Assembly (NCBI GenBank): GCA_013239625.1
Contig: MU053652.1
Span: forward strand, 1,302,001-1,366,000
Length of the DNA stretch: 64,000 bases
Origin: Lama guanicoe
Lineage: Eukaryota
Direction: 5' to 3'
Shown: piece by piece, positions 30,545 to 51,404 of the stretch
Position numbering within the stretch: position 1 is the first letter of the stretch
How the letters are laid out: the number at the start of each line of letters is the position of its first letter
Position numbers and translations under genes: made by a program
Notes under the pieces: generated by a model
What the model saw: only the letters and a program-made list of their open reading frames with translations
Database searches by the model: none
What the model was told of the DNA's origin: nothing

Positions 30545-31750
30545 TGGAATCATTTATATTTAATGTAGTTAAATTCATCCTTTGTGAGATACAGTCCTAT
30601 GAATTTTGACAGATCCATGCAATTATGTAACCACCATGATACTCAAGAAGCAGAATAGTTCCCTCACCTCAGAGAATGCCCTCCTTTGTCACTCGACTAC
30701 ACTTTAATTTGGAAACTATAAAGAAACAAACATAATTAAAATTACCCTTAAGCCTACCACTGTGCCATAACCTCTGTTGACAATTTTGTTGAATATCCTT
30801 CTGGTCTTTTTTTCCCTTCTTTCTTACAAAAAAGAGATCATACTGTCCTTTCTGTTTATAGTCTTTTTCTTTTTTTACTTAGTGTATTTTGAGTCTATTT
30901 AAATTTAACCATTGCATTGGCTTTTGTTTTTGTTTCTTTGCAATTCTAAATAACTGTATTATGAATATCTTTGCATATTGCCATAATTACTTAAGTCCTG
31001 AAAGTAGTGTTTAGATCTCAGTGCATATGTACATTTTTAAAACTTAACTTACATTTTGTCAAATTGATTTAAAAATAGTTGTGCCAGTTTACATTCTGAC
31101 TAGCAATGTCTTGAAGAGCCTGTTTTCCTGTATCCTTGGCAACATTGTTTTATGTTTTTATCAGTTTGATAAATTACAGAATTTCATTATTTTTATTTTA
31201 ATTTTTTGATTTCTTGTGGGATTGGGTATTTTTAAAAATGTTTATTATTTGTATTTTTATGTGAATTGCCAGTCTATGTCATTTATGTGTTTTTCTCTTG
31301 GCTCTCTTTGGGAGTGGGTTTGGGTGGAGGGCTTAATTTTTAAGTGATCTATATGTTAGTAACTGTAATCTCACAGTTGGGGGTTGGTATTTCTTTGTCA
31401 TTTGCTTAATCATTTTGTTTAATTTTTTTTATTTAGTGGAGGTTCTCGTAGGTCCATTCTTTTGCATTTCCTTTGTTTATATTTTGAGGGTATATTTTTT
31501 TTACATTTTTTATTGATTCATAATCATTTTACAGTGTTGTGTCAAATTCCAGTGTTCAGCACAACTTTTCAATCATTCATGGACATATTTGAGGGTATAT
31601 GTTGAATTTAGAAAGATCTTTTCTCGTTACGTCATATAGTCATGCATATTTTATTCACAGGTAGCTTTATCAGCAATCCTTTCAACATTTACTTTTTCTT
31701 TTCCATTCCTGAGAGCCTAGTGTGGTCTTTACTGTGTTGTACCAAGGAAC
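30545..31750 (-). mobile_element. Old LINE-1 (L1M) fragments, interrupted by a young insertion
   Basis: tacagtcctatgaattttgacagatccatgcaattatgtaaccacca; gtgccagtttacattctgactagcaatg; T-rich antisense L1 composition. Confidence 0.6.
31496..31587 (-). mobile_element. Young, extremely 5'-truncated LINE-1 3' tip (92 bp)
   Basis: T-tract then cattttacagtgttgtgtcaaattccagtgttcagcac; perfect 13-bp TSD tttgagggtatat at 31483-31495 and 31588-31600. Confidence 0.88.
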
Positions 31751-32041
31751 CATAGATTATGTACTTGCATATATGTGTATCTATATGTGATCTCGATATT
31801 TTGGTTTCGTTTATTCATATACTTTGAAGCAACATGATCGTTTCATTGAAATCTTCTATTCAAATTGTAATAGAACAATGATATTTAAATATGTCCCAAG
31901 TAAAGCACATCCTCTTATTTTTTCCCCCATTACCTTCTTTGGTTTGCATTTTAAATAGATATTATCCATCAGATTTCTCTGTTGACATTAGTGGGAAAAA
32001 AAAACTTAAGTAACTCTTCCTTTGTTTTTAACATGCTGCAG

Positions 32042-32056
32042 GATATTGAAGTCAAA
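32042..32056 (+). CDS. CHCHD3: 15-nt alternative microexon of CHCHD3, GAT ATT GAA GTC AAA = DIEVK
   Basis: Acceptor taactcttcctttgtttttaacatgctgcAG|, consensus donor AAA|GTAAGT, frame-preserving, 1014 nt upstream of the 84-nt exon; resembles the DIEDK insert I recall in a longer human MIC19 isoform. Confidence 0.82.
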
Positions 32057-33070
32057 GTAAGTAGCAAAACAATGAGCTACAAATATGCAAATGTGTTCAC
32101 CTAAACTAAGCAGATAGTGGACAGTCACCCTACACAGATTGAGCCAGGCGACTGGTGTATGAACAGGAATGCCAAAAATATATACTTTGTTTGTTTCTTA
32201 AAATTCTTGATCAGGCATATCTTCAGCATTCACTGAACAAAATACATGTTAAAAACTTTTCTGACATGGAGTGATGTAGGGAGGTCTGTTCTCTCAGAGA
32301 TAAAGTTCACTTAAACATAATAAAGGTAGAAACAGCAGTTTAAGAAATGCATTTTTAAAATTTATCTTGAAAAAATCCATAAATAACCATCTTTATAATT
32401 TTTTCAAGAATCAATATTTTATCACTTCAGTTTTAATTTTGTGAAAAAAAGATCTTGTAAATTAGAGGTGGAATAACTTAAGAGTTTAAAAATTACTTTT
32501 ATTTTTATTATTGTATTATTTTAAATTATTCAGATAAACAATTATAATAGTTTCTGCCCCTTTCTCCAAAGACAATAATATTTCATGAAAGACAAGGTAG
32601 AACAATACATGTCTTTATATGCAGATTTCACCAGGTAATTTAAGGGTTCTCAAACGTAAGGTTTATATACAAAATGTTATATAGGCATCTTTTTGTTGTT
32701 GTTCAAGAAACAAGGTTAATAACTATGTGTCTTATGCCTGGAATAAAATCGAGGTTTTATTGTGCAGAATATTAATCCTTGAAATTACTCTCCGAAAGAG
32801 AAGTTGAATAAAACTTCTGACATTTCCAAATACATTTGAACAAAGTAGGACACAGCTGTTATAGTTTGAAAAAAAAATACAATGCAGACTCATTCTTTAC
32901 ATTTAAATACAGCAATCATCATCTTATTAATGTTTTTCTGTGGCAGAGACCTAATAGTTTGCAAAAATCTTCAGCTTTGTATACTCATTTCTAATGTAAT
33001 TTATACTTGACTTTTGCTTTGCTGTTGCTGCTTTTTCTTGATATAGTATATTCTTCATTTCTGTTTTTAG

Positions 33071-33154
33071 GCTAAGCAGCTGGAAGAGAAAGATCGGGTG
33101 ATAAAGAAGCAGGATGCATTCTACAAAGAGCAGCTGGCTAGACTGGAGGAAAGG
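33071..33154 (+). CDS. CHCHD3: Internal coding exon of MICOS complex subunit MIC19 (coiled-coil/DUF737 region), 84 nt, phase 0-0: AKQLEEKDRVIKKQDAFYKEQLARLEER
   Basis: Acceptor ttcttcatttctgtttttAG| and donor AGG|GTacga; the 28 open codons match the mammalian MIC19 segment recalled as ARQLEEKDRVLKKQDAFYKEQLARLEER. Confidence 0.96.
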
Positions 33155-40597: not shown

Positions 40598-40769
40598 NNN
40601 NNNNNNNNNNNNNNNNNNNNNNNNNNNNNNNNNNNNNNNNNNNNNNNNNNNNNNNNNNNNNNNNNNNNNNNNNNNNNNNNNNNNNNNNNNNNNNNNNNNN
40701 NNNNNNNNNNNNNNNNNNNNNNNNNNNNNNNNNNNNNNNNNNNNNNNNNNNNNNNNNNNNNNNNNNNNN
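40598..40769. other. Assembly gap (172 N)
   Basis: Run of N seen directly. Confidence 1.
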
Positions 40770-51289: not shown

Positions 51290-51404
51290 TTGGGTAGGGT
51301 ATAGCTCAGTGATAGAACACCTGTTTAGCATGCATGAGGTCATGGGTTCAATCCCCAATACCTTTATTAACAAGAAAAAAGGAAAAAAATACATTACAAA
51401 AAAA
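51290..51404 (+). mobile_element. tRNA-derived SINE, camelid Vic-1-like
   Basis: A box tagctcagtgatag, B box ggttcaatccc, A-rich tail, 12-bp TSD aagagttttcag at 51278-51289 and 51405-51416. Confidence 0.88.

What the first reader, a model, noticed from the sequence alone, without database searches (positions are those of the whole stretch)
32010..32062. Hidden 15-nt in-frame microexon (DIEVK) in CHCHD3/MIC19
Seen: a TAAC-containing pyrimidine tract, TGCTGCAG acceptor, 15 nt with no stop, then a perfect AAA|GTAAGT donor, 1014 nt before the phase-0 84-nt exon. Established: UGC just upstream of the 3' splice site is the SRRM3/SRRM4 motif typical of regulated microexons; I recall a longer human MIC19 isoform with DIEDK at this junction (from memory, unverified). 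Inference: inclusion adds 5 residues to the MIC19 coiled coil, shifting heptad register and perhaps tuning MICOS assembly by tissue. ORF finders and many annotation pipelines would miss it.
Basis: partly seen in the sequence, partly recalled or inferred. Interest (0 to 1): 0.75.

Follow-up and report, generated by a model that had tools for sequence, protein, structure and literature searches.

The report
Known 15-nt CHCHD3/MIC19 alternative microexon
A 15-base mini-exon with textbook splice signals lies 1 kb upstream of a MIC19-family coding exon; it is most likely the counterpart of an alternative microexon already annotated in mouse, so it is ordinary, though its function is unstudied.

Summary
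The acceptor ends at 32041, the 15-nt exon (DIEVK) is 32042-32056, the GTAAGT donor is 32057-62, and a 1014-nt intron leads to an 84-nt exon at 33071-33154. That exon matches Pfam MIC19_MIC25 positions 118-145 from its first base (E 1.7e-9). This fixes phase 0 and therefore the DIEVK frame.

The bare pattern is not beyond chance: about 1 per strand is expected in simulated 64-kb sequence. The full architecture is less common, with 0.078 expected and 7.6% of 500 simulations having at least one. That architecture is a branch-point-like TAAC at -29, a 15/16 pyrimidine tract with CUCU/UCUU, UGCUGC at -8 to -3, no competing AG, no stop, and an 8/9 donor. It fits the published SRRM3/4 microexon layout.

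A Chchd3 microexon is already quantified in mouse islets against GENCODE M25, so "hidden" is not supported. I could not test cross-species conservation or transcripts. No mammalian sequence is reachable, the one exon-wise protein search was blank, and I did not build a joined model.

The heptad-shift idea is untested. The exon shows one 7-periodic seam but a poor a/d core, and this part of Mic19 is unmodelled.

Verdict: probably real, already known, low interest.

The parts
32010..32014 (+). Branch-point-like GTAAC, with the candidate branch A at 32013 (-29 from the exon)
   Evidence: Read, with distances. No branch-point predictor was run. A second TTAAC has its A at 32031 (-11), which is probably too close to the AG.
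32014..32029 (+). Polypyrimidine tract CTCTTCCTTTGTTTTT (15 of 16 pyrimidines) containing CUCU/UCUU motifs
   Evidence: CTCT at -28, TCTT at -27. The best 15-nt pyrimidine fraction is 0.93.
32034..32039 (+). Tandem UGC motifs (UGCUGC) at -8 to -3, between the pyrimidine tract and the AG
   Evidence: TGC at -8 and -5. The position matches the UGC enhancer described.
32040..32041 (+). 3' splice site AG. The only other AG in -40..-3 is at -33, upstream of the branch-point-like site.
32042..32056 (+). Candidate 15-nt cassette microexon GATATTGAAGTCAAA, encoding DIEVK in phase 0-0
   Evidence: The frame is fixed by the phase-0 start of the downstream exon.
32057..32064 (+). 5' splice site GTAAGTAG. 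AAA|GTAAGT matches MAG|GTRAGT at 8 of 9 positions.
32057..33070 (+). 1014-nt intron between the microexon and the 84-nt exon
33071..33154 (+). 84-nt coding exon, AKQLEEKDRVIKKQDAFYKEQLARLEER, of a MIC19/MIC25-family gene
   Evidence: Pfam PF05300 positions 118-145 of 168, E 1.7e-9, 38.8 bits against a cut-off of 33. AG at 33069-70 and GTACGA donor.

Best explanation
The 15 nt at 32042-32056 are a genuine, alternatively included cassette microexon of the MIC19 (CHCHD3) gene. It is most likely the orthologue of the microexon already annotated in mouse Chchd3.

Proposed mechanism:
1. In most cells the exon is too short for exon definition. Its AG sits 12 nt beyond the end of the pyrimidine tract, and CUCU/UCUU motifs can bind repressors such as PTBP1, so the exon is skipped.
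2. Where SRRM3/SRRM4 are expressed (neurons, endocrine pancreas), they engage the UGCUGC element next to the AG.
3. Together with the strong U1-complementary donor, this recruits the early spliceosome, and the exon is included.
4. Inclusion inserts five mostly charged residues (DIEVK) between Pfam MIC19_MIC25 profile positions 117 and 118, in the helical region upstream of the CHCH domain, without changing the frame.

Shown here: the sequence anatomy, the frame, the host family, and that a Chchd3 microexon exists in mouse.
Inferred: orthology to the mouse exon, actual use in this species, the regulators, and any effect on the protein.
For: - Exact anatomy and frame.
- The host exon is MIC19_MIC25 and starts in phase 0.
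- It is the only site on either strand of the 64 kb that passes the strict microexon filter.
- The full architecture is expected 0.078 times per strand by simulation.
- The region 31742-32357 has no second copy in the window, so it is not part of a repeat represented there.
- The published SRRM3/4 microexon architecture has a 5'ss close to consensus, Py and BP signals set further from the AG, a bipartite UCU_CUC[N1-50]_UGC enhancer, and a UGC between BP and AG in 57/73 and 51/71 dependent microexons. All of these are seen here.
- Mouse islet RNA-seq shows a Chchd3 microexon whose inclusion rises in LKB1 beta-cell knockouts. In those islets the abstract reports upregulated neuronal genes, and events were called against GENCODE M25.
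- From recall only, with no call: human databases list a MIC19 isoform 5 residues longer than the canonical one.
Against: - No transcript evidence and no cross-species comparison could be obtained for this window.
- Splice-like flanks of this quality arise about once per 64-kb strand by chance. The richer filter was defined post hoc, and 7.6% of simulations still pass it.
- The mouse paper's text gives neither the size nor the position of its microexon. Its Supplemental Table 14 and Figure 2 were not available.
- No paper in the library links CHCHD3 with SRRM4-dependent splicing. The search CHCHD3+SRRM4 gave 3 papers, none about splicing by title and none opened. CHCHD3+vast-tools gave 0.
- There is no GCAUG within 300 nt and no branch-point prediction.
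- The MIC19 versus MIC25 assignment is recalled, not tested.
Confidence: 0.65

Rival explanations
1. The site is a chance pseudo-exon. It is an intronic sequence that happens to carry an AG, 15 open bases and a GTAAGT, and it is never or only negligibly spliced into CHCHD3 mRNA in this species.
For: Strict splice-like microexon patterns are expected about 1.0 times per strand in composition-matched random sequence. A bare AG-N15-GTAAGT also occurs once on the non-coding strand. No conservation or expression data were obtainable (blank, closed).
Against: The full UCU/CUC-UGC-AG architecture with an open frame is expected only 0.078 times per strand. It lies on the coding strand, 1 kb upstream of the only recognisable coding exon, and in frame with it. 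A Chchd3 microexon is documented in mouse.
Confidence: 0.2
2. The microexon is real but is not an SRRM3/4 switch. Inclusion would be set by other factors, such as relief of PTBP1 repression, MBNL acting on the YGCY in UGCUGC, or muscle/heart programmes. Alternatively it is included at a low, roughly constant level in many tissues.
For: CUCU/UCUU motifs sit at -28/-27 and a YGCY at -8. The SRRM3/4 paper itself says the same enhancer region binds PTBP1, SRSF11 and U2AF2, and that UGC is neither necessary nor specific. The mouse change was described as small. A review-level preprint abstract notes microexons in muscle and pancreas as well as neurons (listing of PMC13174390).
Against: The tandem UGC directly abutting the AG, the set-back Py tract and the strong donor are the hallmark SRRM3/4 layout. 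No RBFOX GCAUG or QKI ACUAAY motif lies within 300 nt. The mouse event rose in islets that gain neuronal gene expression.
Confidence: 0.25
3. A real alternative exon with different boundaries, for example using the AG at -33 or another donor. It would then not be an in-frame 15-nt insert.
For: An AG exists at 32009-32010.
Against: That AG lies upstream of the pyrimidine tract and of the branch-point-like TAAC. Using it would add 31 nt and break the frame, and there is no other AG in -40..-3. GTAAGT at 32057 is the only strong donor nearby.
Confidence: 0.03

Closest known systems
Annotated mouse Chchd3 microexon (quantified by rMATS on GENCODE M25 in LKB1 beta-cell knockout islets; bioRxiv 10.1101/2024.05.13.593867, passages read)
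   Same: Same gene family and, by recall, the same gene. It is a cassette microexon that is alternatively included.
   Different: Its length and intron position are not given in the text I could read. Orthology with 32042-32056 is inferred, not shown. The species also differs.
SRRM3/SRRM4 (eMIC)-dependent neural and pancreatic-endocrine microexons
   Same: Length within 3-27 nt, a near-consensus 5' splice site, a pyrimidine tract set back from the AG, and a UCU/CUC...UGC bipartite enhancer with UGC between the branch point and the AG.
   Different: Dependence on SRRM3/4, tissue restriction and vertebrate conservation are untested here. No paper I could search lists CHCHD3 in that programme; the supplementary tables that might list it are closed.
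[quoted passage not shown]
   Same: It is another tissue-regulated splicing change in the Mic60-Mic19 subcomplex of MICOS, and it alters a helical, non-catalytic region.
   Different: It is a different gene, it removes 33 residues rather than adding 5, and it is not a microexon.

Membership tests
SRRM3/4-dependent microexon programme | Exon length 3-27 nt, frame-preserving | tested here: met
   15 nt, with no stop in the phase fixed by the downstream exon
SRRM3/4-dependent microexon programme | UGC motif between branch point and AG, downstream of a UCU/CUC-rich pyrimidine element | tested here: met
   TGC at -8 and -5, CTCT/TCTT at -28/-27.
SRRM3/4-dependent microexon programme | Strong 5' splice site close to U1 consensus | tested here: met
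   AAA|GTAAGT matches 8 of 9. No MaxEnt score was computed.
SRRM3/4-dependent microexon programme | Branch point and Py tract displaced from the AG (long BP-AG distance) | tested here: inconclusive
   The Py tract ends 12 nt before the AG and a TAAC has its A at -29. No branch-point predictor or mapping was available.
SRRM3/4-dependent microexon programme | Inclusion depends on SRRM3/4 and is neural/endocrine-enriched | not testable with these tools
   No expression data. The only indirect hint is the mouse islet result.
SRRM3/4-dependent microexon programme | Deep conservation of the exon and flanking intron among vertebrates | not testable with these tools
   No vertebrate DNA collection is available. 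The exon-wise protein search was blank.
MIC19/MIC25 (Pfam PF05300) host gene | Significant match to the family profile above the curated cut-off | tested here: met
   The 84-nt exon scores 38.8 bits against a cut-off of 33, E 1.7e-9, profile positions 118-145/168
MIC19/MIC25 (Pfam PF05300) host gene | Paralogue is MIC19 (CHCHD3), not MIC25 (CHCHD6) | not testable with these tools
Pfam does not separate the two. PDB gave no hit and the homologue search was blank.
MIC19/MIC25 (Pfam PF05300) host gene | C-terminal CHCH domain and other family exons in the same gene | tested here: not met
   I scanned 300 of the 1081 + strand open frames of at least 20 aa, pre-filtered for splice-like flanks. None hit MIC19_MIC25 or CHCH at E<=0.01. 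The other exons are presumably outside the 64-kb window, so this says nothing against membership.
Already annotated CHCHD3 microexon isoform (mouse/human) | Same intron position and a 5-residue insert in annotated isoforms of other mammals | not testable with these tools
   This needs full-length isoform sequences or a joined model, and neither was obtainable or allowed. The mouse coordinates are in closed supplements.

The most novel reading that the evidence does not exclude
The five-residue insert is a conserved neuro-endocrine, and perhaps muscle, switch. It would change how the uncharacterised helical region of MIC19 packs or binds (MIC60, SAM50 or membrane), and so tune crista-junction architecture by cell type. 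No paper in the searched library connects MICOS with microexons (0 papers), so this layer of MICOS regulation would be functionally unexplored.
Probability: 0.2. Interest if true: 0.55.

Novelty: already known. Interest (0 to 1): 0.2.

Why it matters
If the exon is used, cells would make two MIC19 proteins. They differ by five residues in a region whose structure is still unresolved. MIC19 controls Mic60 oligomerisation and crista-junction architecture (introduction passage).

An SRRM3/4-type switch in a core MICOS subunit would link the neuronal/endocrine microexon programme to mitochondrial ultrastructure. I found no paper that addresses this.

As a genome-scan finding, however, it re-discovers an exon that annotation already appears to carry in mouse. 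What it offers is a correct local annotation and a reminder that the isoform's function is untested.

Tried and rejected
- **Exon-wise homologue search.** I searched the 49-aa open frame holding the 84-nt exon. No candidate was found in the 27-86 aa length band, and 3 sample-only candidates were left out by the tool. I did not try to get round the length band and did not use the other two searches, because no unjoined window sequence is long enough to reach full-length proteins of roughly 230 aa.
- **PDB sequence search with the exon**: 0 hits at E<=10.
- **Protein Atlas**: closed for new sequences.
- **Search for further exons.** Of the 1081 + strand open frames of at least 20 aa, 301 passed a splice-flank filter. 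I scanned 300 of them against Pfam; the 301st is the known exon frame, already scanned. There was no MIC19_MIC25 or CHCH hit. Only four chance-level hits appeared (HTH_11, AgrB, Phage_zn_bind_8, DUF7398). The 780 frames dropped by the filter were not scanned, so a weak-site exon could have been missed.
- **Rfam gathering scan of the window**: no ncRNA at the site.
  - CHCHD3+microexon gave 1 paper. CHCHD3+micro-exon gave 0.
  - CHCHD3+alternative splicing+exon inclusion gave 2. Passages of both were read and were irrelevant.
  - A six-term regulator search listed 30 of 1069 papers, none containing CHCHD3.
  - MIC19+isoform+splice variant gave 22 papers, 17 listed. Passages of three were read. 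One had MIC19 only in its reference list. One names the MIC19/MIC25 Pfam domain among domains affected by splicing in aged mouse ovary, without detail. In the third the variant concerns Mic60.
  - CHCHD3+exon+inclusion+splicing gave 21 papers, 20 listed. Passages of two more were read: a TCGA alternate-donor event CHCHD3_81837_AD and an expression table.
  - The two pentapeptides gave 137 papers, and the 20 listed were unrelated by title.
  - CHCHD3+SRRM4 gave 3 papers, unrelated by title and not opened. CHCHD3+vast-tools gave 0. MICOS+microexon gave 0.
- **Closed supplements.** The supplementary tables of the microexon papers and of the LKB1 preprint are closed and may well list this exon.
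- **Rejected readings.** A poison exon is excluded because there is no stop and the length is a multiple of 3. Exonised repeat: I found no sign of it, since no second copy lies in the window. That test only detects families represented within this 64 kb, so it is weak evidence. An intronic snoRNA or miRNA is excluded because Rfam gave no hit.

Full report
**What is in the sequence**

- 32010-32041 reads GTAACTCTTCCTTTGTTTTTAACATGCTGCAG.
- The next 15 bases (32042-32056, GATATTGAAGTCAAA) are open and translate to DIEVK.
- 32057-32062 is GTAAGT.
- After a 1014-nt intron comes an 84-nt exon (33071-33154). It is preceded by AG, followed by GTACGA, and encodes AKQLEEKDRVIKKQDAFYKEQLARLEER.

**Host gene and frame**

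The 84-nt exon alone matches Pfam PF05300 (MIC19_MIC25). The score is 38.8 bits against a curated cut-off of 33, with E 1.7e-9. Residues 1-28 align to profile positions 118-145 of 168.
- The match begins at the first base after the AG, and the codon just upstream is the TAG that contains that AG. The exon therefore starts in phase 0.
- A 15-nt exon spliced in front of it must then be read as DIEVK. Inclusion would insert five residues between profile positions 117 and 118 without shifting the frame.
- Pfam does not separate MIC19 (CHCHD3) from MIC25 (CHCHD6).
- PDB holds no sequence relative of this exon.

**Rest of the window**
- Of 1081 + strand open frames of at least 20 aa, 301 had splice-like flanks. 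I scanned 300 of them against Pfam; the 301st had already been scanned.
- None hit MIC19_MIC25 or CHCH at E<=0.01. The 84-nt exon therefore appears to be the only standard coding exon of the gene in these 64 kb, as expected for a gene with very long introns. The 780 unfiltered frames were not scanned.
- The region 31742-32357 has no second copy in the window. I found no sign that the candidate is an exonised repeat, but the test only detects families represented within this 64 kb.

**Is it more than chance?**

Not on splice-site looks alone.
- AG-N15-GTAAGT occurs once on each strand.
- A strict microexon filter required a donor of at least 8/9, a pyrimidine fraction of at least 0.75, and a length of 3-27 nt in multiples of 3. 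It picks only this site on either strand. Composition-matched simulations yield 1.07 (200 sims) and 1.02 (500 sims) such sites per strand.
- I then required an open frame, a UGC within 20 nt of the AG, UCU/CUC upstream, and no competing AG. The expectation falls to 0.078, and 7.6% of 500 simulations have at least one.
- The site also lies on the coding strand, 1 kb upstream of the only coding exon, and in frame with it. These filters were chosen after seeing the site, so I treat them as suggestive, not decisive.

**Acceptor anatomy**
- A branch-point-like GTAAC has its A at 32013 (-29).
- A 16-nt tract at 32014-32029 is 15/16 pyrimidine and carries CUCU/UCUU.
- AACA follows, then UGCUGC at -8 to -3, then AG.
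- The only other AG in -40..-3 is at -33, upstream of the branch-point-like site.
- The donor pairs with U1 at +1 to +6.
- Passages of bioRxiv 10.1101/2024.09.17.613571 describe SRRM3/4-dependent microexons this way: 5' splice sites close to consensus, strong Py and BP signals set further from the AG, and a bipartite UCU_CUC[N1-50]_UGC enhancer. That enhancer can bind SRRM3/4 (at the UGC), SRSF11, U2AF2 and PTBP1. A UGC lies between BP and AG in 57/73 and 51/71 dependent exons.
- The site here fits that description feature by feature. The same paper stresses that UGC is neither strictly necessary nor sufficient.
- No RBFOX GCAUG or QKI motif lies within 300 nt.

**External evidence**
- Only one paper in the searchable library holds both CHCHD3 and microexon. 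It reports increased inclusion of "a microexon" in mouse Chchd3 in LKB1 beta-cell knockout islets. Events were called by rMATS turbo against the GENCODE M25 annotation (passages). So a Chchd3 microexon is annotated and expressed in mouse.
- The text gives no size or position.
- From recall only: human databases list a MIC19 isoform five residues longer than the canonical protein, which would fit a 15-nt exon.
- No searched paper connects MICOS with microexons (0 papers), or CHCHD3 with vast-tools (0). The 3 papers with CHCHD3+SRRM4 are unrelated by title and were not opened.

**What I could not do**
- No tool here holds vertebrate genomic DNA or transcripts.
- The one exon-wise homologue search (a 49-aa open frame) was blank, because only proteins of 27-86 aa were candidates.

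**Is the window human?**

I do not take it for human.
- A gathering-level Rfam scan of all 64 kb gave no SRP/7SL-type (Alu-like) match and one tRNA-like element with an A-rich tail, typical of tRNA-derived SINEs.
- This is weak evidence, and I made no comparison with human sequence.

**Protein consequence**

- The 28-aa exon has one perfect 7-residue seam (L4, I11, Y18, L25). Its best a/d register is hydrophobic at only 5 of 8 positions, with Asp at two of the partner positions. That looks more like an amphipathic helix than a canonical coiled-coil core.
- Five extra residues would rotate a continuous helix by about 140-154 degrees. If the flanking segments form one helix, their hydrophobic faces would be put out of register. 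If there is a break or loop at the junction, the effect could be small.
- A 2026 integrative model of human Mic60-Mic19 modelled only the CHCH domain of Mic19 (residues 180-222). It excluded the rest for ambiguous AlphaFold conformations (PMC13615979, passages). There is thus no structural framework yet in which to place the insert.

**Verdict**
- The most likely explanation (about 0.65) is a real, alternatively included microexon of MIC19. It has an SRRM3/4-type acceptor and corresponds to the microexon already annotated in mouse.
- A chance pseudo-exon remains possible (about 0.2) until conservation or junction reads are checked.
- A real exon under other regulators is a live variant of the main reading.
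- The claim that the exon is hidden or new is not supported, so I rate it already known and of low interest.
- The residual interest is that nobody seems to have asked what the five residues do.

Noticed in passing
window 51295-51366 (+), with an A-rich tail to about 51410: Rfam calls a tRNA (39.5 bits), but ARAGORN finds no tRNA gene. The element is followed by an A-rich tail, so it looks like a tRNA-derived SINE. No second copy lies in the window at E<=1e-5.
   Followed up: partly
window 1-64000: There is no SRP/7SL-type Rfam match in 64 kb of intron. This is a weak sign that the window is not primate.
   Followed up: partly
window 40598-40769: A run of 172 N.
   Followed up: no
window 31996-32004: A run of nine A lies a few bases upstream of the branch-point-like GTAAC of the microexon acceptor. 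Its significance is unknown.
   Followed up: no
window 33071-33154: The constitutive exon is exactly 28 codons, or four heptads. It has a perfect 7-residue hydrophobic seam (L4, I11, Y18, L25), but charged or polar residues occupy the positions a canonical coiled-coil partner seam would need.
   Followed up: yes
intronic open frames in window 434-29258 and 29164-64000: Pfam gave four weak hits among the 300 scanned intronic frames: HTH_11 at 2.4e-4, AgrB, Phage_zn_bind_8 and DUF7398. With 300 frames scanned, I take these as noise.
   Followed up: no
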